Below, in pieces: positions 10,253 through 41,930 of a stretch of DNA of 64,000 nt. The DNA comes from Lepidodermella squamata (taxonomy: Eukaryota > Animalia > Gastrotricha). The stretch spans positions 62,001 through 126,000 of the forward strand of contig JBLDXI010000021.1 of NCBI GenBank assembly GCA_047495785.1, in the 5' to 3' direction. Position 1 is the first letter of the stretch. Each line of letters begins with the position of its first letter. The position numbers were made by a program, and so were the translations under genes. The notes beneath the pieces are model-generated. The model saw only the letters and a list, made by a program, of their open reading frames with translations. It did no database searches and had not been told where the DNA came from.

Positions 10253-13200
10253 TCATTCAACGCCGCTGTTCGACTGCGAGTTCTCAGTCACATCAATGGC
10301 CATAATTTCGAGCGTAGTTGCCGGCATGTCCACCGCCGGGTCGCAAATGATCGCCGCAACGGCCGATTCCGCCTCCTCATCGTCCATCTCATCGTTATTA
10401 TTTTTCGCCGCCTCGCTGTCGACGTCAACCTTGTGCACGTTACGCTTGTGCCGCTTCAGCCGGTACATGTTCGCAAACGTCGACGTACACAAATCGCAGC
10501 CGTATTTGTTCGGCTTCGGAGAGCTGGACCGCGGCCGGGATGACTTTTTAGCCGACGATGATTTTTTCGACGAATTCGGCGGCGCTTTTTCGGCGAGACG
10601 GGTGACGGGCCCGGGCGCTGCCTCGGCGCCCTGCTGTTGGCTCGCAGCTGCAGCAGCTGCGGCGGCGGCAGCAGCGATTGCTCCCGGTTTTCGGTGGCAC
10701 TTTTGGTTGTGTTTTCGGACGCCCGATTTCGAATGAAATGGCCGGTTGCAGACGCCGCATTTGAACGGCAGGTCCTCGCGGCCGTGGCCTGACAGGCGTT
10801 GGTGGTGGAGTAGCGACTCGGGTGTCTGGTAGCCCTTGTTGCAGATCGAACACACGTGATCAAGCGACCCGGCTGAGCTGACTCGCTTCGGACTAGGACT
10901 TTTATTTTTGCTGGATTGAGGAAGTAAAGAAAAGATTGAGATTAGATTTGAGAATAGAACTTCCCGAAAATGGCACCCTCCTCGGGAAATAAGGAAGGAG
11001 ACCCAGGAGCCCCATTAAATTCCCCAAAATTGACATCCAGCACTAACTTAAAACCAAATAAATTTGATCTTTTCGATTTTTCTCAATATCCTCGATCCTC
11101 GATTCATATTATCTAACCTAAATAATCGCTCGATGAGGAGTTACCCCCTCGCCGTTTGCCAAACCAGCAAAAATATTTCAGTAATTTTTCCTAGATAAAT
11201 TCTGAGGATATTTCCAAATAAAATCGGAGGCAGATGAGTTGTATACTCATTCGATAAGAATCCTCCTGTAACCGGAACCTAATTTTCTGCAGCGGAACCA
11301 AATTTCGGAATATTTATTGGGCCTGAAACCACTTTTCAGAACTTTTCAGAGCATCGAAATTCTAAATAAATTATTTTTAAATTCAGCATTAAATTCAATG
11401 AAAGATTCAGCATTAAGACCCAGTTCATTTTATGGATCATAGATAGTCACGAATTCTCAGAATTATCAGAAAATCAACATTTGGAACATTTCGAATTAGG
11501 TTCCGCTCACCTTAAATTTGGTTACTATTTGGCTATTGGTTTTTTGGCAAAAATATATTCTAATTCGGTTAGTGATGGTAGTTTCCGTTTCGTCCGAGTT
11601 TTGTTTTGTTCCATTAAATGCAAATTATAATTCGAAATGTAATTTGCAAATCGAAAGCGATAAGCAGTTTCAAGTACTGAGACCGCTCAACCGAGCACCC
11701 AGAAACTTTGCCAGAAATTGGAGAAATTCAGGGTTCTAGGTTCAGGTGACAAAAAAATCGAAATCCATTATCATTTCAAAAATTCAATGCTGGAATGTCA
11801 ATTTTAAGGCCAAACATTTATTAAGACCCAGTATCCACTTTTGCATTAATTGATTCATCAAGAGAGGTAGAGAAGTAGTGGGGAGAAAAATCTGCCATTT
11901 TTTAAGTTTTCGAGGAGGATGAGGAGGACACCCAATATGAGCACCCGTTCACCGTAACCACTCACCCTTTGAGAGGCCGCTTCGGCGAGGCATTCGGGTG
12001 ATTCTGCTTCAGATGCTGCTCGAGTTCGGCAGCAGAAAGGCACAAAACCATGCAGTGCTCACAGCTGAACACGGCGAAAGAATCAGCAGCAGCAGCTCGG
12101 TCAGGCGACGACGTTTCCGCGCCGACGCCACCATCGCGCGAATCGGCCGCCGAATCAGCGCCACCCGGCCCGATCGTGATTTCATTAGGTTCGCCCAACA
12201 CGTCAGAAATCAACGCCCGCTCCTCCTCCTCGTTCATCTCCATTAGTATGGACGCATTCGGCAGCGCTGGCACGAGCTCGGTCGAAGACAAGGCGCGAGG
12301 CGAGCCGAGATCAAGGCTCGTGTGAATCGACACGGGCAGGTCCTCGTCCTCGTCGAGATCATCGTCATCAGACCGAGTGTCCTCATTATTGTTATTATTA
12401 TTATTACTACTACTCCCCGCCGCGTCCTTGTCCGCCTTCTCAGCATTCGAATGCTCCGCTTTGCGGTGCTTTTTCAAAAAATACTTGTTCTTAAACACCT
12501 GCCCGCATAGCCGGCAGGGCGACTGCGGGTGCACGGTCCGTTTATGCTCGGCCAGGTTCGATTTCTCAATAAAACCCTTGTTACAAGTCCGGCAGACGAA
12601 CCGCCTCAACGGCTGGCCTTCGACTTCTTCATCCCGCTTCTGGTGCTCGGCAATCATAGTCTCAGTTAGCACGCCGAATTTATCCTCATGCTTCGTATCC
12701 AACATGTGAGACGCGAAATGAAACGCTCGAATGAACATGGCGTAGCAAGTGCCGCAGATAAACGCCTTTTGGTCAGCATGCGACTCCTTCACATGCTCGC
12801 AGAGATCTTCGCCGGTCTGGAAATGCAACCGACACCCCTCGATGATGCATACGTGCTTCTTGCGGCCTTTCGAAGCGGACGACGACGATTTTTCAACGAC
12901 GATTTCTTTCGGTTTCCGGCCGCGTTTCGCCTTAACCGGCGCCGGCTGTTGCGCTGCGGGCGGCGGATCAGCAACCACCTGTTGCTGCGGTTTCGCGTAC
13001 TCCGGAATCCAAGCACCGTTATCGATTTGTTCAGATTTCGCCTCTTGCAACTCGACGCCTTCCACCTTAACAATACGCCCTACTCGTTTGTTGTGCCGGT
13101 TAACGAGGGTGGCTGAGACGGGCGAGCGGGATGGCAGGTTGAACTGGTCGTCAGCAGCTAGGCCCCTCGGCGGTATTGCGACCAAATGCGCCAGGGCTGA

Positions 13201-15045
13201 TCTCGATAGCGCGAAACCGCCCTGGTAGCGATTCGCAGCCGATGGCGTGGTCGAGTTATTAACAGCAGTTAGCGAGGAATTGTGGTGATGGCTCGGGTCG
13301 TTGCTAGGCCGGAGGTTTTGCGATAGTTGCGGGCTCTGGTGCTGGTGTGGCAACTGCAGGCCCTGCGCCCGTAGCACCGTCGGGTTGTTCACGTGCGCCA
13401 TGTCCATGTGCCGCAGGTACACCTCCTGCGACGGGAATTCGATGTGGAATGGGCAACTGCGGCAGATGTACCGTTTCACGTCTTCATGTGGCGCCGAGTC
13501 GTTTTTGCTTGCATCGCCGGTTGTTGCTGATGACGATGAGACGGCTTCTTCTTCAACACGACTGCGTTTCGCCGTGGTTTCTACGACAGATACGCTGGGG
13601 TATCGCGGCGCTGGGAGGGCTGCTGTTGAGGAGGAAGTGGACGAGGAGGTAGACGCCGATTGCACTTGAGCAGGCCGGAAGGTGGAAGGAGCCGAGACAC
13701 GTCTGAAAAAATTGAAAAATCCAACTTAAAATAATCGAAGATATAGTTTTGCATTTAGTATATAACCCCCAAATTCAAACCAAATTTTAGACCTGAAATA
13801 TTCTTTCAAACTTTTGCACATATTTTTGCACCCCTCAGCATGCTGATCCGATTCTGTTCCTGAAGGCTCTTCTAGTCCGAGTTCTGCCTCGGCTGCTTAG
13901 CTCAAGTTCCTGTCTGAGTTCTGCCCTCTTGGCTCTTGTACAACTTAGTAACAATTGCCTCAGAGAGTTGCATCAGATCCAGGCGGAGGCGTTGCATTCA
14001 AATTTTCCCAATTTCGAACAGTTTGTCAGCATCTTCTCCCGGATGTCTCGAGTAATGAAGATCCTTATGACAATAGGTCGGTTCTCACTTCATAAGTATT
14101 TCGATGATATTACGGGCTCCTAGGGACTGGCTTCACATACTCAAGCCAGTTGAAGAGACTTCACCAGTCGGAGGTGAAACAGGGATTTCTTATGACGGGG
14201 TATACGATGATGAAGCGATGACCAATTTCTGGGAACGTTGGGCGCGAGGCTTTTATGGCTTGAGAGCATGGCGAGAGCGACTACGACGAAGCAGCCATGA
14301 GGGTTACAATTCCACCTTCGGACCAAATTCTGCATGCGAATTTATCGTCATCTTCGACATCAAATCATTCCGAATTGGAGAATCGACCTGAGGCTAAACG
14401 AGGTGTTTCACAGCCTGTTCCACGAAGAGCCGTGACGGTGAATATTGGACCTATCATCGCGCCATTATCAGACCTAGTCACTGGCTGGGTGAGTTCTAAC
14501 CGATTTAAAGTTGAACGAAAAATCCCAGGATTTTATCACTTAGCCATTCAGACCGAAAACGTACATAAAAACTAATCTGTCTGAAACTACAAAAACCGCG
14601 TCAATTGAAGCGTGCCGCTCTATGCCCTCACCAATGCTTCTTTGTAAAGAGCAAGAATATTATCAAATCAGCTTATTTCTGATGAACTTATTACCCTTTC
14701 CTTGATGTAATGCCCGAAGTCATTCTATTTCTATATTTCAAATTTGAGTTTCTAAACCAAAAGTTACAAAGACGTAATAGACATCTTCCCGTTTTCGCTT
14801 TTACCTAGCTACTTTTTACTATTTTCAAAGTTCAACATTTCTGAAATTTTTATATTGTATCCATATAAATTTCAAAACATCTTCAAGTTTTCGTTTGTGT
14901 TTGTTTTCGTTTTTCTTTTTGTAGAAATTAGGTAAAATAAAAAATAAAAATTAATCATCAGAAAAACATACGTTACGTTAGTGAGAATGCGGACATTGAC
15001 AGGTCGAAGTGGCGGCTGCCCACCGCCACCGGAATTGCCGATCAT
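10253..15045 (-). CDS. ZF1: multi-C2H2 zinc-finger protein (family member); exons 15045-14972, 13702-11966, 10910-10253
   Basis: Signature finger YICRSCPFHIEFPSQEVYLRHMDMAH, further C2H2 fingers, AT-hook-like KRGRKPK, poly-N and poly-A tracts; two in-frame phase-2 introns. Confidence 0.85.
13860..14100 (-). mobile_element. Decayed non-LTR retrotransposon (CR1/L2/L1-type) ORF1 remnant in ZF1 intron 1
   Basis: Minus-strand translation 'SENRPIVIRIFITRDIREKMLTNCSKLGK...WI*...RAKRAELRQEL' resembles the RPI(I/V)VRF...R..IL....KL...I..DL....R..R..L..EL pattern of LINE ORF1; contains an in-frame stop. Confidence 0.5.
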
Positions 15046-15297
15046 GTTCCAGGCAAGGCACAAAAATAAATATAAAATAATTCAAATCTGCATCTAAAAC
15101 AACAAGAAAAATTACTCATACACTTTGAATAAAAAATGCAATATTATTACGACGTAATCATCCTTTTAGCGCATGATTAAATGAACCCCATAGTTAACCA
15201 TCAACAACTATGAAACGGTCTTGAAAAACGCATGGGAAAGCATAATTTTTCTCATCAGTGTGAGACGGAAAGAAATCATTGAAGAAAGAATTTGCGC

Positions 15298-18188
15298 TCA
15301 ATAAAGATAAAGTGGAGGCGGCCCATCGTCCGCATTCTCCACAGGCAGAGGCGCACTTTCGAGCGCCTCCTCGGCTACAGGCTGCTCCGACGCCTCAACG
15401 GCCATCTCACCAGGTGATTCAGTAGTGTCCTCCGGATCCTGTACAGTTCGATCATTGCCATTGTTACTGACATCTTCATTACTTTTAGGCAGATTTTTCG
15501 ATTTAACAACGTCAGGATGCGTAGCGAGCAAATGAGATTTTAAGGCGGCTCGATCGCCGCAAACCTCGCCACAGTGCCAACAATTGTTGCGTAGTTTCGC
15601 ATGGTACAAACCCAAATGTGAATTCAGCGTCCGTTGCTCATGAAAAATATCGCCGCAAAAGCCGCATTTATGCGTCATTTCACCCGGCCGGCACCGGCCA
15701 GCTTTCACATGGGTTCGAAAACCCGTTTGATAGGTAAACGCTTTCAAGCACCTGACGAAAAAAATGCAAAAAATTAACCGAAAAAACAACGGAAAAATAG
15801 GACAAACTTGTTGCATTTGTACCGTTTCCGGCCCGCGTGTCGATCCAAGTGTTCCTTCAATTGTAGCCTTGTGTTCAAAATTCGGTTGCAGATGTGGCAA
15901 GTATAATCGCCACGCGCATTTGTCAGTTCCGCCGGTTCGTCCTTAAACGCCGTCACGACATATCGAGGTTTATTTTCAGAGTCTGGTTTTGATTTTGCTA
16001 CATTTTCATTTTTTCTAGAAATATAAAACATTTAATGCGATTATATAAGGAAGATTTTTCGACAAACTTTTTTCGATCCCCTTCGCCGAGATGAAACGCT
16101 TTAACGTGGGATACTAGACTTTTCGACCTGTCAAACGAGGCATGGCAAAACTGGCATTTAATCGGCAGTTCGCCCTTCTTGCCATGACTCATCGACTTGT
16201 GCTTTATCAGCGAGTTGCTATTCGAGAAGGACATTGAGCACAGGGCGCACTTGAACGGCCGAACTTCAACGTGCGAGAATTCGTGCGCGCGAACTGTTTT
16301 TTGATGCGCGAAAAGCTGCCCGCAAATTCGGCACGCATATTTACGCCCCTCTTCACCGCCCATATTGACAACAAGCGGCGCCCAAGAATTCACGTCGAAA
16401 CTTCCGTCAGATGACGTGCCAGGATTTGACTCGCCCATCTTATCCCGATGGGCGGTTTGTTTATGGTGGAGAAGTGTTAACGTAAAACCGAAAGACAAGT
16501 CGCAAAAATCGCATTTATATTTCGTCAAATTATCAAAATCGATTGGCTCAGCAGTGTTGGCAGTTTGCTTCGCGGCCAAGCTTGAACACGTCTTTTTCTG
16601 GTGTAAATTGAACCCACTCAGCGTTGTGAACATCGTCGCGCAAAGCGGGCAGCAAAACAGGTCGTTATTATGAGCTTTTTCGATATGTTGCTGCAGAATC
16701 GGGATGGATGAGAATCGTATATCATCACATCCGTCGACTATGCAACGTAAATTATGGCTAGAGTCCATGTGGCTCGACAGTTCTGGCTCGCTTGAAAACG
16801 CTGATTTGCAGTATTTACACAGCAGATAGCAGTCGAGGTGTTTCATCAGCGATTGATGCAATTGAAGGCCGCGTTGAGATTGGAAGGTCGCTTTGCATTT
16901 GTCGCAAGTGAATATCGTTGAAGAATCATCAGTCGAAGGCTTATTGTTATTGCTAGCATTCGAAGACCGCGGCGTGGTTTTATTAGGAAGAGCTATGCCT
17001 GATGTTTGTACAACACTCGGATTTAGCAAATGAGCAAGGTCCATGTGGCGTAGATACACGGCTTCATTCGGGAATTCGACGCGGAATGGGCAGCTTTCGC
17101 ATATCCACTTCTTCTCCGGCTTCACGTTGATTTCAGATGGAGTCATGCGTGGATGGTGAGCTTCGAATCGCGATTTTTTCGACGACTCAACATTTTCGCT
17201 TGGATATTTCGGCGTGACTGACTGAGATTTACGCTGGCCGTCAATTCTCATCGCAGCTGCCTCGTCGTTATTTGATTCCTCATTATTACTAGAGAGAATT
17301 AGAGAAAAACAATTATTATTTTACAAATTTCAAGACGGATCTCTAAAAATATAACAAAACTAATGTGAACGGATCAAAAAGGCCAATTTGACGGAAATCT
17401 TAATCGACTATGAATGTTATCAACTAAAATATTAATCCGGAAGAGTTTGATGAAACCAGGAAAAATACCGAAAATTACCCAACCAATTACCATCGGGTTT
17501 TTCTTCATTTTCCCGTGTAATTATAACTTTTTCACACAATTTCAAATTTCAAAAATCTTAAATCTCCTTGAAAGCTTGAGCAACTAAAACATTTCAACAA
17601 ATTTTTTAAGGCGAACTTACCAGCAACAAGAGCAATTAACGTGATCGTGAGCTTCAGCGGGTTCCGCCTTGATAAAGACGGCTTCTGAAGGCTGGGAAAA
17701 TCCAGTTGGGGACCGCATTTGAGGTGGATTTGTTGTGGTCAAGCGCTGAAGCACCGGCATAGTAGCAATATCATCATCGAATGGCGCCTGGATCTGAGTT
17801 TCACGATTTGCAACAGTTTCTTCGCTCGATTTTTCAGATTCTTGTCTATCCTGGCTATCAGAGTCACCCGAACCTTCAGCATTACTGCAAATAAATTAAA
17901 ATTGAAAATTGAAAAATTGAAAAGTTCGAAATTAAAAATATACCGTTCTAGAAAAGCATCGACATCATCGCAAGAAACCAGTGTGTTAGTTCGAATAGAT
18001 CTCGGCAAAATGCCTTGCTCTTGCATTTGCACTCGCTGATTCGTTGAAAGAGCAAAGTAAGTAGTATTGCTGCCGAACATTTCACGCAAACTTTTGTGGC
18101 CATGAGTTTTGAAGGCCTTGATAAGGCACGACTCCGGGTACCATTCGCGCCCGTTAATCGGGACGCGTACGACGCCAACAAGCGGCAT
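15298..18188 (-). CDS. ZF2: winged-helix-like N-terminal domain + multi-C2H2 protein; exons ~18188-17944, 17884-17621, 17288-16068, 16014-15808, 15751-15298
   Basis: Exon 1 is homologous to the exon at 41680-41930; 'FIKAEP'; signature WICESCPFRVEFPNEAVYLRHMDLAH; more than 10 fingers; four phase-2 introns. Confidence 0.85.
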
Positions 18189-18354: not shown

Positions 18355-20491
18355 TCAACTTGAGCAGGAAAGGGACGGTTTTTTCGTTCGTTTAGTTTTA
18401 GCTACATTCACCCGAAGTTCTTTCAACGGGACATCATCATCGTCATCACTTTCGAAATGATGTTTCGATTCGACATGGCAAGTCAACGACCGTTCAAACC
18501 AGAAACTTTTACCGCAAAACGAGCATGCATAAGATTTCGTGTCGTGCTTTACAGATAAATGAAGCTCAAGATCTTCGTAATTTTCAAAAATATTCGAGCA
18601 AGTTTTACACGCGTAAGTCATTTGATCAGGTGAAAGACCGTGGATGAGAGTTTTGTGGAGAGTCAAAGCAGCAAACGTTTTGAATTTTCCACCACAGTTT
18701 GAGCAGTCTATCGTAGATTTCCGACAAGTTTTAAAATTGACCAATCCTCCTTCAATAACAATTTCACATTCCGCCAGTTGGCACAGTTTCCCAGTGATAT
18801 CACACTTAGCTATATGACCGTCATATTCTTCAAGGCTCAAAGACATGTCAAAACATTTCGAGCAGACAAAAGCCGAGTTGTTGTGATAGGAGGCAACGTG
18901 ATTTTTCAAATGTGAGCCAGATCTCAAAATAGCACTACAACCTTTGAATAAACACTGTTTCTCGCATTTTCGACGATTTTCAACGTCATGAGCGTCAGAT
19001 AAGTGTTCATTTAAGGCGGTTGGGGTTAGAAAACAGGCATCATTCGGGCACAAATTGCAATGATAAGTCGAATAGACATGGCCAGTTTTGTTACGATGGC
19101 CATCTAACAGTTCAATTTTGTCAAATTTAACCCAACAGATTTGGCAAGTGAGCAAATCAAACGCAGAATTATCGCACGTTTTTCCATCAAGATGCGCCTT
19201 AAGATCGAAGATATTTGCAAACATGGCGGCGCAAAATGAACAGATAAACGCGTCTTTCCCATGCCAATGATCGACGTGACTTCGAAATGCAGCTTTACCG
19301 CGATAGACAGCTCGACATCCATCGACAATACACTCGAAAACTGACCCTTTTGAGCCGGATTTACCCGACATTTTAGGATGGACTTTTTCAATGTGGGAGT
19401 TCAGATTATTTCGGCTCAACGAAATGACGCCGCAATGATGGCAAACGAAGCTAGCATACACATGTTTCTCCTGTAGCTGATGGCTGTGAAGGTCAGCGAA
19501 AGTTTTGAACGTTTTCAAGCAAATTTTACACGTCAAAAAATCGCAGTTGGGAGATTCTGGCCGTTTTTCAACGAGACATTTCTCGCCGTGTTTTGATAAA
19601 TCCGAATACAACTGAAATTGGCAGAAACACTTTCGGCAGATGAAAATTGAGTTCTGATGCCACTCATAGACGTGGCGGACCAATTTTGGCCCTGCCTGGA
19701 AAATCGAATCACAACCCTTCGCCAAACAAATCAATTTAGGGTCATCCGTAATTGCGGCAATTCGATGATCCTTAGCTACATGGCGACTAAGATCTTCATC
19801 TTTCAACGCGAAATATAGGCATTTATCAACTGGGCAGTGGAGCGACGAATAGATATGGCCTTTATCAACACGATGGGCCTGAAAATTCTCGAAATTCTCG
19901 AATCTCTTAATGTACTTATTTGGGAACTTATTGCAGATTCGGCAATAAATGACGGCATTTGTTGAAACACTAGGGGGAGCACTGGAAACCTGACGATGAG
20001 CGATATTTATATGCCTCAAATAGATTTCCTGGCTCGGAAATTCGACTGGAAAGGGACAAGAAGAGCAGGTGAATCGCTGCTCTGTTCTTGTTACTTGCGG
20101 CTCGTCAAAAACCTCAGGGAGTGGCGTTTCACAATCGCAACTGCACTCCTCCTTGATATAGAAATCGACGGATGAGCGGCATCTCAATTCAGTGGAATAA
20201 TCGACAGGTTCAGCTTTTACAAAATTGCAACTGAAAATTCGAAAAGCTTAATTTGTGGGTGAACTTTTAGCGCTAAAACTAACCTGGAATTCGAAAGACT
20301 GCTAGAACTTCGGTCATTCAGGCTCGAAGCTGGGCGACCACCAACGGGGACGAAAACTATCTTTCCTGGTTTAGCTACGTTTGGCTGGTCTCTAAATATG
20401 AATTGTAAAATGATGAATAAATTCAAATAATTCAAATTGTATACCTGACAAGACGAAATTTGTTGGATACACTCAGCACGTTTCGAGCCAT
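18355..20491 (-). CDS. ZF3: family zinc-finger protein with three four-finger blocks
   Basis: ATG 20491; micro-exon 'GKIVFVPVGGRP' then 'VKAEPVD...IKEECSC'; signature FTCSSCPFPVEFPSQEIYLRHINIAH; ORF 18355-20187. Confidence 0.88.
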
Positions 20492-20936: not shown

Positions 20937-23000
20937 CTATGATGGTCTTCTTTGTTTCTTCACTTCCGGTTGAGTCGACGATTCAACAGAGTTTTGACGC
21001 AAAATTGTCGAACGACGCCGTTGCCTATTCGTTTCCAACTTAGACAAGGATGCTAAACAATAGCCAACATCGTCACCGGCCACCTTATCGCAATCAGCGA
21101 GGTGATTTTCGAAATTTTCAAGAGAGAAAAGAAAAGCCAAACACTTGGGACACAAAAATGCCGAATCTTTGTGGTAATTTTCCACGTGACGAATTAAATG
21201 CTTCTTCGAATATAGTACCGCAGAACAACCTGGTACATCGCAATTGAACTGAATGGCCCCAAGGCCGAACCCATGGACCTCCTGGAAATGGCGTGCCAGG
21301 CCGTCAGAAGTCAAGAAATTAACGTCATCGAGGCAGATATCGCAATGATGTGTGGAGTATGCGTGGAGTGTCACTTGACGATGTAGATCCAACTCGGCGA
21401 AATTGGCGCATTCTTCACCACAAATTTGGCAGTTGAGACAATTCAAGTTTTCGCGACTCTTAGAACAAGTCGAGTCGATATGAACGCACAATTCGTCGAT
21501 GTTAAAATACATTTTACAGCAGCTCAAACACGCGAACGCCTCGTTCAAATGCCACTGATCAACATGGGCCAAATACGCGAATTTGTCGCGATAGGTCGAA
21601 AAACAGCCATCGACAGAGCAACGAATATGAGCAGAATGTGCCTCATGAACATCCGAATGGTCCTTTTTAACGTGCTCAAAAAAGTTCGGAGGATATGGGA
21701 AGTTGAGCTCGCAATAACTGCAAACATTGTTGCGGAACCAGTGACGCGAATTTCTCACGTGGGCGCCCAAGTCTTTGAACGTTTTGTACGAAATCTCGCA
21801 GATTTTGCATGCGCGTAAATTTGTCGATACCGGGTCGAAAATTCGATCGTTTTTACAAGAGTTCTTGTGGTTATTCAACGCATTCCTTGTTTTGAATTGT
21901 TCGCAACAGTTTCGGCACGGAAATATGGTGCCTGCATGCCATTTTCGCGCGTGAATAATCAGCGATTGCCGCCTTGAAAACACCGAATCGCAGTTTCTAA
22001 CCGCACATTTGAAACGCTGCATGTCAATAGTAGATATTTCCTTGTGATTTTGCTTGATATGCAGAGTCAAGGCGAAATCAGCCGCTGCGATGAAGTTACA
22101 GCCATACACCGGGCAGTAGTGTGAAGCGTAAAAGTGCTGACTTCTCACGCGATGGCTGCGCAAACTGGGAAAATCCGGGAACTCAGCGTCACAAGTTCGA
22201 CAGAAAAACTCAACTTTTCTAGGTTGGAGCGACGTTTCGGCAGGTTGATTCTGATGAGCAATTTCTTGGTGTCTTGTGTAAGCTAATTGGCTACGAAAAG
22301 CGACGGGAAAAGGGCACGATAAGCAGACGAAATCAGGCAAAATTTCAAAGTTTGATGGAACATCACTCGAATGCGAGTTTACAGTAATAGCCTCCGTTTC
22401 CGAATTTCGTGTAAATAATTCCGGGACTGGAGGAGGTGACGTGGCGCTGGAAAGTGGATGAGCCGTGTCCAAGTGGCGAGTGTAAATTTCGCGGGTGGGG
22501 AAAGACAGCGGGAACGGGCAAGATCGGCAAATAAATTCCTCTGCACCCTGCAAAATTTGCGGGTCGTCGTCAACACGAGGCGGTTCTACCAGGATACAGT
22601 CCCTGTTATTGGAGCATGTGCACTCGGGTTTCACAGACAAATCACGATTCGAGGAGCTACGATGAAAAAATGAAATTTGCAAATAAATACAGATTCAAAG
22701 TATTTTTTCTTACCAATTTTGATCGATTGGAGGAGGGTCGATTATCTCGACTGGCTCAGATTTCGTATTGCTCAGCCTTAACATTGGAATTGGAGTAATT
22801 TCCGGGGAAAAATAATTAAAAACCCACTGGCTCCGAAATTGAGCAGCACTTGGAGCTTGAAGTCCGCTAAGAGGGACAAGACGAATCCTGCTCGTCCCCG
22901 ACTGAAACGAGATGCTGAATTTAAGTTAGATTACAATAAGACAGGAGGAAATAAAGTACCTTGGTCTAATCGAAGGAATACTCGAATGGTTCCTGGCCAT
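20937..23000 (-). CDS. ZF4: family zinc-finger protein with a duplicated signature finger
   Basis: ATG 23000; micro-exons 'RIRLVPLSG', 'TKSEPVEIID', then 'VKPECTC'; two CPF fingers; three four-finger blocks. Confidence 0.85.
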
Positions 23001-25121: not shown

Positions 25122-25256
25122 AACTGCGTTTTTTGAAATGCCATAAATAATTTAAAAATTATCTAAATCGTAAAAGGCGAATTTTAGTGAGCAAAAATCA
25201 GTAAAAACCAGCAGAAATCGCAGAAAAATAGGAAAGTGTCAATTATTCGAATTTTT

Positions 25257-30965: not shown

Positions 30966-33598
30966 TCAGCGATTAATTTGCGTTTCTTTAAGGCACGCCC
31001 GTCGAATAACATGATATCGATAGGCCAGCCATCGCTTGAACCGATAACCACACGTTGCGCACCGGAAGATTTTGAAACATTCTCTGTAGGCTGATCTCCT
31101 CGAACTCGAACGAACGGGATGAACAATAAGCCTGTGCCGGTGAAGCAAATTCTTGTACTTGAAAACATCGTCGCAAATTGAGCAGCGAAACTTGAAATCC
31201 GCTGAATCACAAGGTTTCGAAGCATGACCGCTCAACCGCGACCTTGTTTCGAAGTATTTGCCGCATTTGTCGCAACGAAACCCCCAGCGATTAGCATTTT
31301 GACTATCACACCGTTTACCCTTAGGATGTTTGACTTTCGTTGAAAGCTTCACAGAATGAGACATTATCAAGTGATTTCTCAGGTGACCTTTCTTCATGTA
31401 GGCCTTCCAGCAAATCGGGCAACGATTTTTATAGTCTCCAGGGTCACAAGGCTGCTTTTGATGGGCTAAAAATTTGCCTTTCGTCATCAAGTACTTGCCG
31501 CATTTTTCGCACGTATAACCACCTTTCGCAGATTTCTGACGGCAGATATTACAATTAGAAGGGTATTCCTCCAGTTTCTTCTGAGAATAGCTTAGTTTAC
31601 ATGTCGAACATGTGACTTTGTGAGCTGAGCCTTTGAGAGCAATCGAATCTTTTTCAGTTTTAATTCGCTTGTCGCAGTGTTTGCAATCTTGCGACGAATT
31701 TTCCACGGAACACATTGATGAATGCTCGTCCACTTCTTTCTGATCGAAGCCAAAGAACGAACAGCGCGAGCATAGATAAACCTGATTCTTGTGGTTGTCA
31801 AACACGTGACGCTCCAGGTGATTTCGACATTGCAAAACGGCACAACAGCCCTTCATCGGGCAGAAAAATTCGCGACTTTGCCACTCTTCTTCCTTGTGTT
31901 CAGTCTCGTAATGCTGCTTAAGATAAACAGGCGACAGATGATACAAGTCTTTTGGGCAAATTTCGCAGTGATAGGTGAAGTAGCAGTGAAGATGAGCCAT
32001 ACGATGCGGGCTCACCGTTCTTCCATGTTTCATTTTGACATTACAAACGAAGCATTGACTGAGGTAGTGCCGCTCCAAATCATCAACAAAACGATTTTTC
32101 AAATGATACTCAACGTCTTTAGGGTTGAGGAAAACTTCAGCGCAACAATTGCAGGTGTAAACCTGGTGTTTATGCCACTTTGTAATGTGACGGGAAAGAC
32201 CTGTGATATCGCGGAAAATAGTCGAACAGCCCGGGATGCTACACCGAAATTGGCCGTAGGGTTGATGCGGAAGATCAGGATGAGATTTTCTCAAATGCTC
32301 GTCCAGTTCAAAATTCGAAAGACCGACAAAGCGACAATGGCTACAAGCAAAAATGAGGTAGAAATGGCCGAATTCTCTCTTATGGTCCTTCAGACTGTCG
32401 AACGATTCGCATGAATTACAGCAAATTTTACACCTTAGCAAGTCCTTCGACGACTCATCGGCCGTTTTCCCGAAATCGCAAAATAGAAAATGACCTTCGA
32501 GTTGATACAACGCCATGAATGGTCGAAGGCAGAAACGGCAGGTGTAGCCTGAAATCGGATGCCAGTCACTGATATGGACGGCCAATTTTTCAAGACTCAA
32601 GAAAATCGAATCGCAGCCTTTTGTTACACATCTGAACTTTAGAAAGGGTCCCGCAGGATATTCTTTGTATTTACTAGTCAAATGCATGTTGAGCTCATCC
32701 TCTGTTACTCCAAAAAATTGACATCCTACGGCCGGGCAGTGGTAAGATGTATAGTAGTGGTTCATCTCAGCTCGATGAGCGGCAAATTTTCTGAAATCTT
32801 GGAATGAAGGCACTTTGCGACCACCCGGCAATGATTGGCATATTCGACAAATCATGAAATTATTCGATTCTTCATCCGGCTGATTTTGCTGGCAAAATCC
32901 AGTAGAATCGATAGGATGGGCGGTCTCCACGTGTCGCATGTAAATTTCATGCGTTGGAAAGCGGACTTCAATAGGGCAAGTTTTGCAAATGAATTCCTGT
33001 TCCACCTTAACGATTGGTAGTAAATCATTCTGAATAACGCTTCCGCTGGTTTTATCTGTATGAAGCTGGTTGGAACGTTTAGAATCAGGGCGATTAACAA
33101 CACTGACAGGCCGAAAAGACCTGTTGAAAGAATATTAGAAATAATTAGGAAAATTATCCAAATAATACCTTATCACAGGTTTACATGGTGAAACAGTAGA
33201 AATTGAGTTGTTCGATTCATGCTGATTGACACGAGATTCCTCACACAACGTATCACTCGAAGAGCTGTAGCAAATAAACGTAACAATAAATATTATCTAA
33301 AACGATTAAAGCCTATTTACCTTTTCGCCGCATTGAAATTGCTTTCGACAGGTTCAGATTTCGTAGGAACAACACTATAACAAAAAAAACTCAGCCTATT
33401 CATTTCCTCTCAAAAAAATAATTTACTTTTTAGCAACAACGTTTGATGCTGGTCGAACGCCAACTGGCACGAAAATGATTTTACCTGAAGTCAACGGTTG
33501 GGACTTCCTATTCATAACTTGAAAATTCAAAAAATTAAACTTCGAGAATGAATTAACAATACCTACTTGGCAGAATTCGGCAGAGGCAAGTCCAACAT
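30966..33598 (-). CDS. ZF8: family zinc-finger protein (ZF7/8/9 subclade)
   Basis: ATG ~33598; 'GKIIFVPVGVRP', 'TKSEPVE', 'PIVKVEQEF'; ORF 30966-33005 extends in frame to the acceptor at 33121. Confidence 0.85.
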
Positions 33599-33744: not shown

Positions 33745-36210
33745 TTAGAGGCAGCTTCGCAAGCGAACGTGTTTTCGATAGGCCAGCCATCGCTTGAAAC
33801 GGCGGCCGCATGCTTCGCAACGATGAATCTTGAATTGCTCTCTGTACATGAACATCCTTGGACCAAAAATGCGGAAGTGAACTGTTGATTTGTGCTTGGC
33901 GAGTTGATTTTCCAGTTTGAAAATATCGCCGCAAAGTGAGCATTTAAATTGAAAATCAGCAGAGCTACACGGCTTTAACCGATGCTTCCTCAAGCTAGAC
34001 CTTGTCATGTAGACCTTGCCGCATGTGCCGCAACGAAAAACACTGCTATTCTGGTTATGGACATCTAATCGCTTCAAATTCAGGTTAGCCAAGCCATTGG
34101 TCATTTGTACGGAATGCAATGAAAGCAAATGATTTCTCAGAACTCCTTTTCTCAGAAAAATGTTGCCGCAGACTGGACAGCGAAATTTCACGTTTTCAGG
34201 ATCGCACGGCCGCTGTTGATGTTTTGCCAATTTCGCTTTTTTCCAGAAATACTTGCCACATTTTTCGCAGCGAAATCGACCTTTAACAGGTTTCCTGTGG
34301 CCAATTATACGTTTTTCCTTATATTTGATGGGCACATGCATTTTTCGGCTATCATTTGCCACAGTTTCCATGTGAACACCCGACAAGTGTGCCTCGTAGT
34401 CCTTCGAAGTGGAGGAAAAGAACGCGCAGTGAGAACATAAGAAGATCCGAGTCTTGTGGCAGTCGCGAACATGGCGACCTAGGTGATTTCGCGACTTTAA
34501 AACGGCACAACAGCCCTCCACTGGGCAAAAAACTTCGCTGTTCTGCCATTCTAACGATTCGTGTGCAGTAGTGTAGTGTTGTTTCAGCAAATCAGACGAC
34601 AGATAATACAAGTCATTCGGGCAAATTTCGCAGTGATAGGTGAAGTAACAGTGAAAATTGATCGTACGATGGCGGCTCCAGCCGAATTTCACCCTGTTGG
34701 TTTTCGTGCAAACGATACATTCATCGTTTGGGCCATTCCTCTCATTGGCGTCGAAAAGGCACCCCCTCCCACTCAAATGGAGTGAAACATCACTAGGATT
34801 ACCAAGTACTTGGCCACAATATTTGCATGGGGAACCCTCGTCTTTATGCCACGAAGATGCATGATTTACGAGGCCTGGGACATCGCGAAAGACCGAGGAA
34901 CATCCTTTAATGCTACAGCGGAATTGGCCGTACGGTTGAGGGGGCAGATCAGGATGAACTTTCCTCAAATGCTCATCCAACTCGAAATTTGAATGACCGA
35001 TAAAGTTACAGTGGCTGCACGCGAAATTGAGGTAGAAATGGCCTAATTGATTTTTATGCTCGTCCAGAATATTAAAACATGTAAAGGAAGTATTGCATAT
35101 TTTACACGAAAGCAAATCTCTCCATGACTTGTCTGCCGCTTTCCCGAATTGGCAAATTAAAAAGTGAGTTTCAAGATGGGCCAGCCCTCTGAATCCCCGA
35201 AAACAGAAACGACAAGCGTAGCCCGAGAGCGGATGTTTTTCTCTTAAATGGGCGAACAATTTAGGTTCATCAAAGAAAATGGAATTGCAACTCCTCGCTA
35301 CACATTCTAGCCTTGGATGCCTTTCGACAGGAATACCGTTGTGTTTAGCATTCACATGTTCGGTTAAATCGTTTTCGACCAAAGCGACAAATCGACATTT
35401 TAGGACTGGGCAATGGTAAGATGTACAAATGTGGTTATTTCCAACACGATTCCCATCTAGTTCGACGAAATCCTCAGGAATTCTCGCTGTTGAATCTGTC
35501 TGAATTATTCGCTCATTCTCCCTAGGACGAACAGGACGATTAGGCTGGATAGGATGAACAGTGTCCAGATGCCGAACGTAAATCTCATGCGATGGGAAAC
35601 TTCGGCGGACAGGGCACAAGGTGCAGAAATATTCGCATGCCACCCCAGTGACAGTCAGATCATCATCATCAGCTGTGTTTCTGCTCTGCTGATTATAATC
35701 TGGACGCTTTTCAACTATATTTGGTCTAAAAGACCTGTTAAAAACAATTAGGAAATAAAAACAAAAAATTTTGAAAGCGAATAATACCTAATAATTGGCT
35801 TATTGATCGGTTCATTTCGAGGGGCTCGAACGATTCGAAATTCTTCCTCATCCCTAGACTCCTCGAGGCTGTTGCAAACGCATTCCGGCTTGATGTCACA
35901 GTTTCCTACATCAATCCTGTACAAAAATTGGAAAATGAATTTTTCCATAATTATTTGCGTTTTTGAGTCATATTACCCTCGACTGGTATGGGCATTGCTG
36001 TCAATTTCAATCGGTTCGACTTTGGGGAGCAGTAGCAATTTATTGCCATTCTGACTGGATGAACTCGATGCGACAAGAACCCTGCCAGGAACAACAATTA
36101 TCACGCCGTTTTTGACAGGTGGCTCGGGTCTACAGAAAAACATCGGATTATAGTGACGACTAGAGCTCTGAAAAGTACCTGGTGGAATTATTAGGCACCC
36201 GGCTCCGCAT
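33745..36210 (-). CDS. ZF9: family zinc-finger protein (ZF7/8/9 subclade), first block finger degenerate
   Basis: ATG 36210; 'GVIIVVPGR', 'PKVEPIEID', 'IKPECVC'; very similar to ZF7 centrally and C-terminally. Confidence 0.88.
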
Positions 36211-36354: not shown

Positions 36355-38710
36355 TTATTTTGTACATGATTGTGAAAGTTTGGAAAGTTTTGAGCTTGGA
36401 AACGAACATTCCGATAAATGCGCCTCTAGACTTCCGAGTTGGAAAAACACCTCGTCACACATTTTGCAGGAGAAATGCGGTTTTGGAAGCAATTTTTTCG
36501 GCTTCAATCCGTGTTCAGCAGCTTCGTGCATTGAGAGCACAACATCCGTTAGGAATTCCTCATCGCAAATTGCGCAACCGAAAAATTCGGACTGCAAAAT
36601 TTTATCCGTAGTTTTTGCGGCTCGCGGCTTGAGCCGGCGAGTCCTTATGTAACTAGCGCCATGCAAAACGCTTTCTTCTTCGAAAGCGACCTTCTCGCAA
36701 TCAGCGAGATGTTCATCGAAATCTTCCAGAGAAAACGACCACGCGCTACATTTCGGGCAAATAAACGCCCCAGATTCGTGACGAATCTCAATATGACTCA
36801 ATAAATGAGCGTCTGATCGCAGAATGGCGCTACAGCCTTTGAACTGGCATTTCACGGCATCACTCGATATTTTCTTCAACTGATGGTATTTCATTAAATG
36901 GCAGTCCAGTGCTTTCCGAGTGAGAAAATGAACGTCTTTCGGACAAATATCGCAATGAAACGTTGCGAAATTGTGACAGCTGTCCTCTCGATGCGACGCT
37001 AGCTCTTCGAAATCCTCGAATTCCATCTCGCAAATCGGGCAATTGAGTAAATCGATCTCAGATTCGAAATATTGTGCATCCACGCTTTTATCACCGTTAC
37101 ATTCGAAATCAATGTGGTCAGATAGACCAGCGATGTCTACAAACATTTCCGGGCACTTTGTGCAGATGAAAGCGGCCTTGCAATGCCATTGTTCTACATG
37201 GCATTCGAACGATCTTCTGGTACGACAAATCGACTCGCAGCCAGGTACAACGCAAATAAATTGCTGATCCGAACTTGAAGCGATGTGATTAGGATGAGCC
37301 GCTTTCATATGATCATCAAGTAGTGAATTCGAAGTCTTCGAGATGCCGCATAAACTGCAGATATAATTGTTGTAATCGTGACGTGTCCTCGTTTTATGCG
37401 CGCCAAGAGCTGGGAAAGTTGTGCGACGCACGAAGCACACTTTGCATACAAATAAATCTTTGATTGATCGCTCAACTTTAGATGGAGCGTTGCAAACATG
37501 GAGCGGTCCGTGAACGCCCAACGACTGTTCAAAACAATGTTTACAGACGAAAAGCGATCCTGGGTGCCACTCATTAGCATGAGAAACTAATTTCAAGCCA
37601 TGCGCGAAAATCGATTGACAGCCTTCAATGCGGCACACGATTTGAGGTAGACCTTTAACTGAAATATTTGAATGCTTCGAAATCACGTGTTCCATTAAGT
37701 CCTCTTCTTTCAACGCTACAAAAAGGCAGTCGTTTGAAGGACAGTGGTAAGATTTGTACTGATGACCCCACGCAACTCGATGAGCCTGGAACGATTTGAA
37801 ATTGTCGAAATTTTGAAGAGTATCCGTGAAAGACGAGTGGCAGATTTTGCAAAACATGTGAGGTTTGACTGGGGCGGTGATTGTACATGAGCTGCCAATA
37901 GCCCTAGGGTGGGCAACACACAAATGCCGCATGTAGATGTCGTGGGTTGGAAATTCAACCGGAAATGGGCATAAATGGCAGACAGGCTTCGTTTCCACTC
38001 GGATGAGCGGCTCTTCGCTTTCCAGTTTCGGCTCAACTGCGTAGCAATCATCATCACAGCTGCACGTGCACTCCTCCTTAATTTTAATATCTGTAGCCGG
38101 GTAACATCTGTGTGAGAAAAAAACAGTTTTAGGACCCTGACGAATTACGAATATTAATCTAGGATTCTAGCCCTTTATTAGAAGCTCCAGCACTAAATTT
38201 CCCCAAAATATGGTTTTTCAATATCGTACCGATTATGCCTATTTTGCGCTCAGTTCTCAAGCCTACTGAGTCGATATCGATTTTATAAATCAGTGATTTT
38301 TCCGATATTGCAAGTCTTGAAAGCGAACATAGAATAATTGTCTACGTACTAGGTGGCCTAAATAAAAGACCCTTGGAAGATGGGCAGTATCATTATCAAA
38401 AATAGCAGAAATCGAAAAATCGAAAAATTAGCGGTGAAAATATTTAGAACTTGAAAATCACCTGTTAGTTCTTGCCTCGGGCTCCACCACCACCGGCTCA
38501 GTTTTCCAAACAACAGAAGGGGTTTTTCTAAAAAAGCGGCAAAATACATACAGGCATTAATTGACTCAATTGAAAATTTACCGAGCTATTGGCACGAAAA
38601 CGAACGGCACGAACGACTGTGATGAGCCCGGAATGTTACTGAAATTAAAATTTACGTTTGCATTGAAATAAAATTGCGATAATTTACCTGCTCTTTCTCT
38701 TTGCTGCCAT
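36355..38710 (-). CDS. ZF10: family zinc-finger protein
   Basis: ATG 38710; 'PFVFVPIAR', 'WKTEPVVVE', 'IKIKEECTC'; signature VCHLCPFPVEFPTHDIYMRHLCVAHP. Confidence 0.86.
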
Positions 38711-38867
38711 TATTCCATGCCTAGGAAGTTAGCATTACAGACATCAACAATTAAAGATCTAAGAACAAAACGCTCGAATTATTGAAAATATTCAGATTTT
38801 TATTGAAAAAAACGTGATTAATAGACGTTGGTTAAAATGAAATAAAGAGAAGTCGAAGCACGGTCAA

Positions 38868-41800
38868 TCAAGCCGAGTCCCAAACCAGCAAGTTCTCAAT
38901 GTGAATCGGTTCTTCCTCGCCCGGCGCGCTGAGAGCCGCGAATGGGTCAGTTTCGACCGGGCAGTTATCCGGCCGATGGTACGCGGCGACGTGCGCGTCA
39001 AATTCGAGCCGGTTGTCGAAAACACTGGCGCAGGAATGGCACGGAAATTTGTAGATTCGCGTCGTCGGTCGCGGGACAGATTTGCCAATCGGGCGGTTTT
39101 TCGCACACGATTTTCGCGCCACGTGAGCTCGATAGGCCTGCCACCATTTGAAGCGCATTCCACAGGTATCGCACCTGAAAATTTTACAAAGCGCCCGGGT
39201 GCCGCGTTTCCGGCTATCCTGAGACCCAGGCAACTGGACGGAGTGGAAGTTCAACAGGTGTTTGCTCAGAATCTCTTTTTTCTTGAAAATGTTGCTGCAA
39301 ATCAAGCACCGATATTTGAAATCAGTCGGGTCGCACGGCTTCTTCTCGTGGTCTAGCAATTCGCTCTTCTTCCAGTAGTACTTGCCACAACGCGAACAAC
39401 GATATGAGCCTTTCGCGACCTTTGCACCATGAGCAGTTGTCGAGTGTTGTTTCAATAAATGCTTATTCGCAAAAACTTTCGAGCAAATTTCACAGCCATA
39501 GTCAAAGCCACAGCTTTTCTTGCAGTGATTCACCAAATGGGTGTTATTCGAGTAGCAACGGCCACATTTCGAACATTCAAACTCGGATTTCGCGTCTGAC
39601 GGTATCGGTTGACCCGGATGAGCGTCTCTCATGTGCTGCGACAGCTTATTCCGAATTTTGAAGACTTGCGAGCAAATTGAACAGTGAAATTTGTAATCAT
39701 CAGGATTGCACGGCTTCTCGCAATGGCGCAGTAATTGCGTTTCATACGAGAAAATTTTGCCGCAGATATTACACGGAAATCGAGCGCCTGTTTCGACCAT
39801 CGAATGGCGCTTATCCATATGCATGACAAGGGCAGTGTTGCTCTTGAAAACGTTTGAGCAAACCTTGCAAGTGAAATTGTAGTCAGATCTCGAGCAAGGG
39901 AATCGTCGATGTAAATTGAGCTGTTTCCGCTGGCCGAACGATTTCCCGCAATTTCTCGGGCATTCGTAACGCTGAACGCCGGAATGTTTGTCCAAATGTT
40001 CGTTATACGTTGTATAAGTGCTGAAAACTTTGCCGCAAAGTGGGCAAGTCTTGAGGCGCTTTGGAGCCGCAATTGGCTTAATGCCAATATGTGACAACTC
40101 GTGATTTCGCATCGAAAATCGACTCGCTAAAGAGTGATTGCAAATCCGACAGACACAAACTGGTGCACCATCCAATTTCGCGATAAACGGTTTCCATTTG
40201 TTCTCCTGTAAAAACGATTCGGTCACCTCAGCGATATCATAATTCTCCGGGTGGGAAATGTAGCGATGATGCAGAAACAAGACCGGATCAGTAAATTCGT
40301 TAGCATCCGTGCAGAATTCGCAAAGGAATTTGTTTATTACAATAGGCTTCTCCGTCGCTAGTTTCCGCGGCTTTCGCAAATCTTCTGCACGATTGGATCT
40401 CGAAGGGCCAGGGCACGACGATTTCATGTGAACAGCTAGACCTTTCTTCAATCGAAACATCGAGTAGCAAATATTACATGCAAAGGCTGATTTTTTGTGC
40501 CACTTCGCCACGTGCAGGCAAAGCGCTTTCCCATTTCGGAAAACCGCTCTACATCCGTCAACAATGCATATGTGCTGAACTTTAGAAGGTACAGGTTTTG
40601 TGTCAGCATGGTAAGTTGCCATGTGTCGATCCAACTCAGCCTCGGAGAGTGCCATGTCCCAACAAACTTCACAAAATTGGCATGCATAGTTATGCTTCCG
40701 CTCAATTTGATGAGCATGCAACGCTTCGAAAGAGTTAAAAAGATGCCCGCATATTTTACATTCCAACATATTTATGTTCACAACCCGTTGCCGGCGATAT
40801 TGCTGTGGCGCGGTTGACGACATTTGCATAGCAGGTCGCTCCACAACAATTCCATGGCCTCCGTGCCACTTTTTCGCGTGAGCAACTAGCTGATCATTCC
40901 GACGGAAAACAAATCCGCAGCCCTCAAAGGCACAAGGAAACCTATCCGGGCTCGATACTTGCTCATGCGAAGTGGCAATGTGGTAATCAAGGTCAGGGTC
41001 ATGAATGGCGATGAATGAGCAAAATTCGCATTGAAACGACGAATACAAGTGTTTAGCTTGAACACGATGAGATTGAAATGCTTCGAATGAGCTACGTGAA
41101 ACGAGGCACATTTTACACACGAGCCAGTGGGCAGTCGATGAAATTTCATTGCTGGGCAGTTGCCTTGATGGGATGGAGACGGTATTTGGGGCTAGCCCAG
41201 ATCGATCAATCACCACTACACCTTGCGCTCTGTAAGGCTGTGGATTGAACGGATGTGCCGTATCCATATGTCTAGCATAACTGTCTTCGTCGGGAAATTC
41301 AATGAGAAAAGGACAGCTTTCGCAAACATAGCAACCGGTAACATTTGATTGCTTCGATGAGGATGGCTGATTTTCACTTGAAAAATATCACCACAGATGA
41401 ATGCCAGTCAATTTATAATAAACAACCTACCTCGAGCTGGAAATCATCCCGTTTTGAAGCGCATTCGACTTGCGTTTGCCATCTGAGTCCGGGCTGTCAC
41501 AGATATACTTGCAATTGAATTTCGCAAATCACCAACACCTTACCCTGCAGACTGCACCAAGTGAGCATTGCCCCCAACAACGATTACAGAACTACCAGTA
41601 TCGACTGCTTCTTGCTGGAGTTTACTGAGATAGTAAATGACTCGGGTGAATATAACCAGTAGCATTAGCAATTTCTTACGCTTCGTTCAGGACAGCATCA
41701 ACGTCTTCACACAACACTAAAACCGTCAACCATTTAGTGTAAGACGGCGGCAGATTTGCACTTCGGACGATCCGCTCCCTTTGATGTTCAGATAAAGCAA

Positions 41801-41930
41801 AATAACGGAAATGTAGATATTTGGCTTTGAAGTCCTTCTGAGAAGTGCAGTTGAGCAGCTGGCAAGCTTCCTTTACACTGTAATACTCCTTTCCATCGTC
41901 CTCCAACAGAATTCTTCTAATAGGTGGCAT
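38868..41930 (-). CDS. ZF11: winged-helix-like N-terminal domain + ~20-finger zinc-finger protein; 5'-most family member
   Basis: Exon 1 41930-41680 'LLEDDGKEYYSVKE...CEDVDAVL'; three phase-2 introns; signature YVCESCPFLIEFPDEDSYARHMDTAHP; ORF 38868-41267. Confidence 0.88.

What the first reader, a model, noticed from the sequence alone, without database searches (positions are those of the whole stretch)
10253..41930. Tandem array of 11 lineage-specific ZF genes sharing one invariant signature finger
Seen: every gene ZF1-ZF11 has, ahead of its variable finger array, one isolated finger of the form F/Y-x-C-x2-C-P-F-x-V-x-F-P-(S/T)-x-(E/D)-(I/V)-Y-x-R-H-(M/L)-x-x-A-H-P (twice in ZF4, shortened in ZF7). 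It stays conserved while the downstream fingers diverge. Inference: it is an effector or dimerisation module analogous in role to KRAB, ZAD or SCAN, defining a possibly undescribed expanded ZF class such as TE-targeting repressors.
Basis: partly seen in the sequence, partly recalled or inferred. Interest (0 to 1): 0.78.

Follow-up and report, generated by a model that had tools for sequence, protein, structure and literature searches.

The report
Private zinc-finger family with signature finger
Eleven neighbouring zinc-finger genes of a small invertebrate (probably the gastrotrich Lepidodermella squamata) all begin with the same unusual finger, found nowhere else in the genome or in public protein data. 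It is an internal copy of one of the family's own fingers, and nothing ties the family to transposon control.

Summary
Eleven minus-strand C2H2 genes (10.2-41.9 kb) carry 12 copies of one finger, C-x2-C-x14-H-x4-H; the ZF7 copy has x12.

A profile of the 12 copies finds only these 12 in the 121-Mb genome (66-83 bits). In 1.84 billion protein representatives it finds no hit near that level; the best is 59.6 bits, summed over four ordinary fingers.

- **Fold.** The finger is a classical beta-beta-alpha C2H2 finger with a two-residue hairpin insertion.
- **Origin.** By profile comparison it is a copy of the family's own "F2" finger type, not a foreign KRAB/ZAD/SCAN-like domain.
- **Downstream fingers.** They are not a variable array. 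ZF3-ZF10 share a positionally conserved triplicated four-finger module.
- **Conservation.** The signature finger is the best-conserved finger, but modestly so (identity 0.55 against 0.32-0.53).
- **Distinctive feature.** Helix positions -1, 2, 3 and 6 are fixed (S/T, E/D, I/V, R). Those positions vary freely in the other fingers.
- **Age and selection.** Synonymous sites are saturated, so the family is old. Omega is 0.16-0.33 in the youngest trio.
- **Transposons.** Nothing points to transposon targeting.

My best reading is a shared docking surface for one common partner, set in a larger conserved N-terminal region of short motifs. Relatives of this species are barely sampled, so how old the family is remains open. 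The contig is not human.

The parts
11962..13665 (-). ZF1 main exon: signature finger at 13393-13470, long low-complexity linkers, few further fingers. ORF 10253-10855 may be its 3' exon or a separate gene.
15998..17251 (-). ZF2 main exon: signature finger at 17030-17107 and one F1-F4 module. Further 3' exons probably lie in 15298-16031.
17949..18188 (-). ZF2 first exon, starting with ATG: an ~80-aa helix-rich domain shared only with ZF11.
18355..20187 (-). ZF3 main exon: signature finger at 19996-20073. Upstream motifs: A 20331-20366, B 20200-20217, C 20137-20157.
20937..22682 (-). ZF4 main exon with two signature fingers, 22458-22535 and the more degenerate 22254-22331. Motifs: A-like 22851-22889, B 22746-22763, C 22614-22634.
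23159..24838 (-). ZF5 main exon: signature finger at 24635-24712. Modules: M1 24203-24589, M2 23813-24178, M3 23432-23794. Motifs: A 24975-25010, B 24875-24892, C 24761-24781.
25257..27161 (-). ZF6 main exon: signature finger at 26988-27065 (CHF in place of CPF). Motifs: A 27362-27397, B 27255-27272, C 27126-27146.
27624..29606 (-). ZF7 main exon: shortened signature finger at 29508-29579 with canonical x12 spacing. Motifs: A 30107-30142, B 30041-30058, C 29914-29934.
30966..33005 (-). ZF8 main exon: signature finger at 32916-32993. Motifs: A 33450-33485, B 33344-33361.
33745..35643 (-). ZF9 main exon: signature finger at 35554-35631; the first module finger has lost its cysteines. Motifs: A 36072-36107, B 36006-36023, C 35874-35894.
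36355..37998 (-). ZF10 main exon: signature finger at 37909-37986. Motifs: A-like 38581-38613, B 38488-38505, C 38062-38082.
38868..41381 (-). ZF11 main exon: signature finger at 41253-41330, upstream of the ATG that the ORF list used. Two modules plus a long tail of more ordinary fingers. Motif A-like at 41558-41593 lies in a small upstream exon.
41682..41930 (-). ZF11 first exon, starting with ATG: an ~80-aa helix-rich domain, 30% identical to the ZF2 first exon.

Best explanation
This is an old tandem array of 11 C2H2 zinc-finger genes at a single locus. As far as present data reach, it is private to this gastrotrich lineage.

All members share one body plan:
- small 5' exons encoding short conserved motifs;
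- one isolated signature finger;
- one to three copies of a four-finger module (F1-F4);
- a variable tail of more ordinary fingers.

The signature finger is a classical beta-beta-alpha finger with two extra residues in its hairpin (C-x2-C-x14-H-x4-H). It descends from the same ancestral finger as the module's own F2 fingers. Selection acts on the protein, because synonymous sites are saturated. What is held constant is the helix face that fingers use to touch a ligand: positions -1, 2, 3, 6 = S/T, E/D, I/V, R.

Inference: every paralogue presents the same surface to one common ligand, most likely a shared protein partner or another family member. The remaining fingers, whose contact positions differ between paralogues, would set each protein's own target. 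The finger probably works together with the conserved N-terminal motifs rather than alone.
For: **Shown**
- 12 copies, and only these, in the genome.
- No member-level relative in 1.84e9 representatives, in Pfam, in the word searches or in metagenome contigs.
- PDB profile search aligns it to ordinary fingers with a two-residue gap. The AlphaFold model is beta-beta-alpha with core pLDDT above 90. Foldseek returns only ordinary C2H2 fingers.
- hhalign scores against F2-type fingers are 27-34, against 9.5-18 for other finger types. Module repeats score E 2e-13 and 3e-18.
- Identity is 0.55 against 0.32-0.53 for the other fingers, and higher than the core in 27 of 28 pairs.
- Over 55 pairs pN is 0.30 and pS 0.80, so this is not gene conversion.
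- Contact-face identity is 0.67 against 0.24 for the other helix positions. The 12 core fingers give 0.22 against 0.24.

**Favouring a protein partner over DNA (inference)**
- The finger is isolated by linkers of about 15-40 residues in most genes (more in ZF4, about 190 in ZF1) and has no canonical linker.
- Its net charge is about 0, and the flanks before it are acidic.
- The hairpin is rigid and rich in proline and aromatic residues.
- Conserved linear motifs lie around it. K-x-E-P-[VI]-E occurs in 9 genes and [IV]-K-[PE]-E-C-x-C in 7, against 1 and 0 matches on the control strand.
Against: - No experiment or co-folding was done, so the ligand is unknown.
- R at position 6 with D/E at position 2 also fits base contacts, and single fingers can bind nucleic acid with help from their flanks.
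- The margin of conservation over the best core fingers is small (0.55 against 0.53 and 0.48).
- In the youngest trio the finger is no more constrained than the rest, and the hairpin is decaying there (ZF7, ZF8, ZF9).
- Exon structure upstream of the finger is inferred from sequence only; no transcript was seen.
- 'Private to the lineage' is weak. A conserved control gene of this window finds nothing closer than 48% identity, so close relatives of this animal are not sampled.
Confidence: 0.5

Rival explanations
1. Common nucleic-acid anchor. The signature finger binds the same short DNA or RNA element in all paralogues, and the other fingers add specificity.
For: Conservation sits exactly on the canonical base-contact positions, with an invariant Arg at position 6. 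The fold is a normal DNA-binding-type finger.
Against: It is a single isolated finger behind variable, long, non-basic linkers. Net charge is about 0 and the flanks are acidic. One finger alone reads only about three bases.
Confidence: 0.25
2. No separate role. It is simply the slowest-evolving finger of an old family, kept for folding or stability, and its position at the head of the protein is a historical accident of a partial module duplication.
For: It is an F2-type finger of the family's own module. Conservation forms a continuum, with M3F3 at 0.53 and M3F2 at 0.48. There is no extra constraint in the ZF7-ZF9 trio.
Against: Solvent-exposed helix positions are fixed while neighbouring ones vary. 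It is retained in all 11 genes, including ZF1, which has lost most modules. The two-residue hairpin insertion is kept in 11 of 12 copies.
Confidence: 0.12
3. This is a newly expanded class of transposon-targeting repressors, in which the finger plays the part of KRAB, ZAD or SCAN.
For: The genes form a tandem array in one orientation with a family-specific N-terminal region. Many uncharacterised zinc-finger families with their own N-terminal sequences exist in animals, such as FiNZ (PMC10547256).
Against: There are only 11 genes at one locus. Synonymous sites are saturated, and omega is 0.16-0.33 in the youngest members. Contact residues are no more variable than other helix residues. The fingers are widely spaced, almost without canonical linkers, and many are acidic. 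The finger is not a foreign domain.
Confidence: 0.1
4. The motif belongs to a known, broadly conserved orthologous family that was simply not recognised.
For: Weak sub-threshold Pfam matches to generic or ZNF451-type fingers.
Against: An exhaustive HMMER search of 1.84e9 representatives gave no hit near member level. The top hits are ordinary x12 fingers in metagenomic fragments.
Confidence: 0.03

Closest known systems
Lineage-specific tandem zinc-finger families with a family-specific N-terminal module (KRAB-ZNF in tetrapods, ZAD-ZNF in insects, FiNZ-ZNF in cyprinid fish)
   Same: Paralogues lie in a head-to-tail genomic array. A conserved N-terminal region precedes a finger body that differs between paralogues. 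The family is restricted to one lineage.
   Different: - The conserved element here is itself a C2H2 finger derived from the family's own fingers, not a separate fold.
- There are 11 genes rather than hundreds.
- Divergence is old, with purifying selection.
- The fingers are non-canonical, widely spaced and positionally conserved.
- There are no KRAB, ZAD, SCAN or BTB hits.
C2H2 fingers used for protein-protein contacts (Ikaros-family C-terminal dimerisation fingers, FOG fingers that bind GATA factors); from my own knowledge of the literature
   Same: An isolated classical finger, separate from the main finger body, with a conserved helix surface and no canonical linker.
   Different: There is no sequence relationship. 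Here the finger is N-terminal with a two-residue longer hairpin. Any interaction is inferred, not shown.
ZNF451-type paired fingers (Pfam PF23107/PF23108)
   Same: The fingers are widely spaced and non-canonical, with an F1-type finger resembling U1/matrin-like fingers. There are weak Pfam matches (27.6 and 28.8 bits). N-terminal hydrophobic and K-x-E motifs recall SUMO-related motifs.
   Different: All matches fall below the curated cut-off of 30 bits. The signature finger itself matches in only one of 12 copies, at E 0.08. There is no evidence of SUMO-ligase function.

Membership tests
Classical C2H2 zinc finger (beta-beta-alpha) | Two Cys and two His ligands with conserved hydrophobic core residues | tested here: met
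   C-x2-C-x14-H-x4-H with core F and Y in 11 copies; x12 in ZF7. The spacing is two residues longer than canonical.
Classical C2H2 zinc finger (beta-beta-alpha) | Beta-hairpin plus helix fold | tested here: met
   AlphaFold model: strands 7-9 and 16-18, helix 21-31, core pLDDT above 90. The nearest structures are all C2H2 fingers, though at weak E-values.
Classical C2H2 zinc finger (beta-beta-alpha) | Reaches the Pfam zf-C2H2 curated cut-off | tested here: not met
   Only 2 of 12 copies match at all, best E 0.002. The PDB profile alignment needs a two-residue gap.
KRAB / ZAD / SCAN / BTB zinc-finger families | Presence of the named N-terminal domain | tested here: not met
   No such Pfam family appears in any main exon or first exon.
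Transposon-targeting, fast-evolving ZNF families (KZNF/FiNZ-like) | Large, recently expanded copy number | tested here: not met
   11 genes and 12 fingers genome-wide. pS is 0.6-0.9 for most pairs.
Transposon-targeting, fast-evolving ZNF families (KZNF/FiNZ-like) | Diversifying selection or hypervariability at DNA-contact residues | tested here: inconclusive
   Contact and other helix positions are equally variable (0.22 against 0.24). Omega is 0.16-0.33 in the youngest trio. Older pairs are saturated.
Transposon-targeting, fast-evolving ZNF families (KZNF/FiNZ-like) | Binding to and silencing of transposons | not testable with these tools
   Needs DAP-seq or ChIP and knock-down.
ZNF451-type paired fingers (PF23107) | Reaches the Pfam curated cut-off (30 bits) | tested here: not met
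   Best scores are 27.6 bits (ZF3), 20.8 (ZF6) and 28.8 (ORF 10253-10855).
SMARCB1/PHF10-type winged helix (proposed in another note for the ZF11 first exon) | Sequence or fold match to the solved domain | tested here: inconclusive
   There is no Pfam hit at E<=1 other than HTH_17 at E 0.023 and no PDB sequence hit. The AlphaFold model has pLDDT 56 and is unusable. Language-model neighbours are small excisionase-like helix-turn-helix proteins at 0.91.

The most novel reading that the evidence does not exclude
The conserved N-terminal region is a previously undescribed partner-docking or self-association module of animal zinc-finger proteins. It consists of a hydrophobic strand motif, K-x-E motifs and the signature finger with its fixed helix face. 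It would be built by recycling one of the family's own fingers, and would be functionally parallel to ZAD or KRAB but of independent origin.
Probability: 0.3. Interest if true: 0.6.

Novelty: new variant of a known kind. Interest (0 to 1): 0.36.

Why it matters
Lineage-specific zinc-finger families with their own N-terminal modules are a recurring theme in animal gene regulation, but only a few (KRAB, ZAD, SCAN, FiNZ) are understood. This case comes from a barely studied phylum. It would show a different route to such a module: an ordinary finger from the family's own repeat unit, frozen on its recognition face and placed ahead of the array. If the finger docks a common partner, it offers a small, tractable system of 11 genes at one locus. 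That system could show how zinc-finger families split the 'what to bind' and 'what to do' functions. If it does not, this is just a well-characterised private gene family.

Tried and rejected
- **Word search**, ZF1 finger region and whole ZF10: nothing.
- **Metagenome scan.** Run with three rows, it gave two chance matches.
- **Nematode origin.** The SL1 leader is absent.
- **Extra family member.** The only other genome hit (contig 74, 23.6 bits) is an ordinary finger in an unrelated gene.
- **Top hits of the big search.** They are metagenomic fragments with canonical-spacing fingers and carry no informative names.
- **Gene conversion as the cause of conservation.** Rejected, because pS is 0.80 and only 46% of identical residues share a codon.
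Uninformative for most pairs because of saturation.
- **First automated mapping of helix positions.** It mis-indexed several fingers and was redone.
- **Fold search of the ZF2/ZF11 first-exon domain.** Not attempted, because the model was too poor.
- **Protein Atlas on ZF5.** It gave only generic C2H2 neighbours.
- **Neighbouring zinc-finger genes (42-56 kb, 0.4-1.3 kb).** They share only generic finger similarity.
- **Spliced protein models.** All searches were run exon by exon by reference, so the full-length proteins were never searched or folded.
Full report
**What is there**

The window is contig 21, 62001-126000, of a 121-Mb assembly in 151 contigs. It carries 11 long minus-strand open frames packed with C2H2 fingers between 10.2 and 41.9 kb.

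Each gene holds, near the start of its large exon, one finger of the form aromatic-x-C-x2-C-P-F-x-V-x-F-P-S/T-x-E/D-I/V-Y-x-R-H-x4-H. ZF4 holds two. ZF7 has a version two residues shorter.

A profile of the 12 copies, searched in six frames over the whole genome, returns these 12 at 66-83 bits. The only other hit is an ordinary finger at 23.6 bits in an unrelated gene on another contig. The motif is confined to this array.

**Which animal**

The contig is not human. It has introns of 50-60 bases and no KRAB-type genes.

Earlier notes of this scan call the genome the gastrotrich Lepidodermella squamata. I could test that only indirectly. The published assembly is 122 Mb in 157 contigs with 43% G+C (PMC11660948). 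That agrees with 121.2 Mb, 151 contigs and about 42% G+C here. The nematode SL1 leader is absent. That paper does not mention zinc fingers.

**Is it a known family?**

- Pfam finds only generic finger families in the main exons.
- Scanned alone, none of the 12 fingers reaches any curated cut-off, and only two touch zf-C2H2 weakly.
- An exhaustive HMMER search of 1.84 billion cluster representatives gave 28 hits at E<=0.001. The best is 59.6 bits summed over four fingers.
- The top proteins are metagenomic fragments. Their fingers have canonical spacing and only a loose C-P-x-x-F resemblance.
- Word searches and a metagenome scan found nothing.

A control tempers this result. A conserved SRAP/HMCES-like exon of the same window finds nothing closer than 48% identity. 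Close relatives of this animal are therefore not in the databases. The family is absent from sampled phyla, but its depth within gastrotrichs cannot be told.

**What kind of finger**

- A profile search of PDB sequences aligns the signature to ordinary fingers (PRDM9, ADR1 and others), with a two-residue gap right after the second cysteine.
- AlphaFold gives a hairpin plus helix with core pLDDT above 90.
- Foldseek returns only ordinary C2H2 fingers, at weak E-values as expected for 44 residues.

It is thus a classical finger with a two-residue longer hairpin and H-x4-H. ZF7 has lost exactly those two residues.

**Family architecture**

ZF3-ZF10 align along about 450 residues. That core is three tandem copies of a four-finger module (F1-F4). 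Within ZF5, module 1 against module 2 gives 29% identity at E 2e-13. Module 2 against module 3 gives 33% at E 3e-18.

Profile-profile scores group fingers by type:

| Comparison | hhalign score |
|---|---|
| F1 with F1 | 32-41 |
| F3 with F3 | 38-57 |
| Signature with F2-type fingers | 27-34 |
| Signature with all other types | 9.5-18 |

The third module's F2 has the same x14 spacing and the same C-P-x-x-V-x-F pattern as the signature finger. The signature finger is therefore a copy of the family's own F2 finger, not an imported effector domain.

ZF11 has two modules plus a long tail. ZF2 has one module. ZF1 has only parts of one.

**How conserved**

Among ZF3-ZF10 the mean pairwise identity of the signature finger is 0.55. 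The 12 core fingers range from 0.32 to 0.53. The signature exceeds the core in 27 of 28 pairs, although these pairs are not independent.

Against ZF1, the finger is 43-64% identical while the rest is 22-28%.

This is not gene conversion. Over 55 pairs pS is 0.80 and pN is 0.30, and only 46% of identical residues share a codon.

In the youngest trio (ZF7-ZF9) omega is 0.16-0.33 in every region. There the finger is not specially constrained.

The most telling result concerns the helix. Positions -1, 2, 3 and 6 are S/T, E/D, I/V and R, with identity 0.67. Other exposed helix positions vary, at 0.24. In the 12 core fingers the two classes are equally variable, at 0.22 and 0.24. The ligand-contact face of this one finger is frozen across paralogues.

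**More than a finger**

No main exon has an in-frame ATG before the finger. Short upstream exons supply the start and carry conserved motifs:
- a hydrophobic strand, G-K-I-V-F-V-P-V-G-G-R-P and variants;
- K-x-E-P-[VI]-E, in nine genes;
- [IV]-K-[PE]-E-C-x-C, in seven genes.

On the plus-strand control these two patterns match once and not at all.

These motifs resemble SUMO-acceptor and SUMO-binding motifs. That is pattern-level inference only.

ZF2 and ZF11 also start with an ~80-residue helix-rich exon, 30% identical to each other. I could not confirm it as a SMARCB1-type winged helix.

All searches were made exon by exon by reference.

**Reading**

The finger stands alone behind variable linkers. 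It has net charge near zero and acidic flanks before it. It has a proline- and aromatic-rich hairpin and a fixed helix face.

I read it as a shared docking surface for one common partner. A protein, or another family member, is more likely than DNA or RNA. It probably acts together with the N-terminal motifs, while the other fingers differ between paralogues.

The descriptive part is well supported. The ligand is inferred.

The transposon-repressor idea has no support. The family has 11 old genes under purifying selection, with non-canonical and often acidic fingers and no hypervariable contact residues.

Noticed in passing
window 17949-18188 and 41682-41930; L017:1378-1743: The shared first-exon domain of ZF2 and ZF11 has three identical weak matches (E 0.08) elsewhere in the genome. 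In the one copy I read (L017), the match is a 121-aa ORF that lies beside an ORF resembling (from memory, untested) the N-terminal region of Helitron transposases. The domain may be related to a transposon-borne helix-turn-helix.
   Followed up: partly
window 28392-28922 (ZF7) and 34465-34998 (ZF9): ZF7 and ZF9 share a tract with dS 0.37, against 0.77 for the whole core and saturation at the signature finger. Amino-acid identity there is 70-90% in most windows. This looks like gene conversion or a partial secondary duplication between non-adjacent paralogues.
   Followed up: partly
window 23432-24589 (ZF5 as example): The core of ZF3-ZF10 is a triplicated four-finger module. Charge alternates between finger types: F1 and F3 are positive, F2 and F4 negative.
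   Followed up: yes
window 27624-28300, 30966-31700, 33745-34400, 38868-39900 (approximate): The C-terminal tails of ZF7-ZF9 and ZF11 (and, more loosely, ZF6) repeat a two-finger unit. A C2HC-like finger ending in P-C-D-P-x-D is followed a few residues later by a C2H2 finger. The last finger is the most conserved of all (0.59) among the four genes that have it.
   Followed up: no
window 35340-35450 (approximate): ZF9 has lost the cysteines of its first module finger, so individual fingers decay within otherwise intact genes.
   Followed up: no
window 44359-56378: Six or so further minus-strand C2H2 genes lack the signature finger and have only generic similarity to the family. A Tudor-domain gene (52460-54073), a Rab14-like GTPase exon (59845-60345) and an SRAP/HMCES-like exon (60500-61330) follow.
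   Followed up: partly
window 25110-25125 (ZF5 first exon): A splice-acceptor-like CAG lies two bases before the ZF5 start codon. This fits the leader trans-splicing that other notes report for this genome. The ZF3 start lacks an adjacent AG.
   Followed up: no
P0001, P0002 (metagenomic proteins): These uncharacterised environmental eukaryote proteins carry four isolated C-x2-C-P-x-x-F fingers, separated by long serine-, threonine- and lysine-rich linkers. They are the nearest things to the shortened ZF7 form but are not members.
   Followed up: partly
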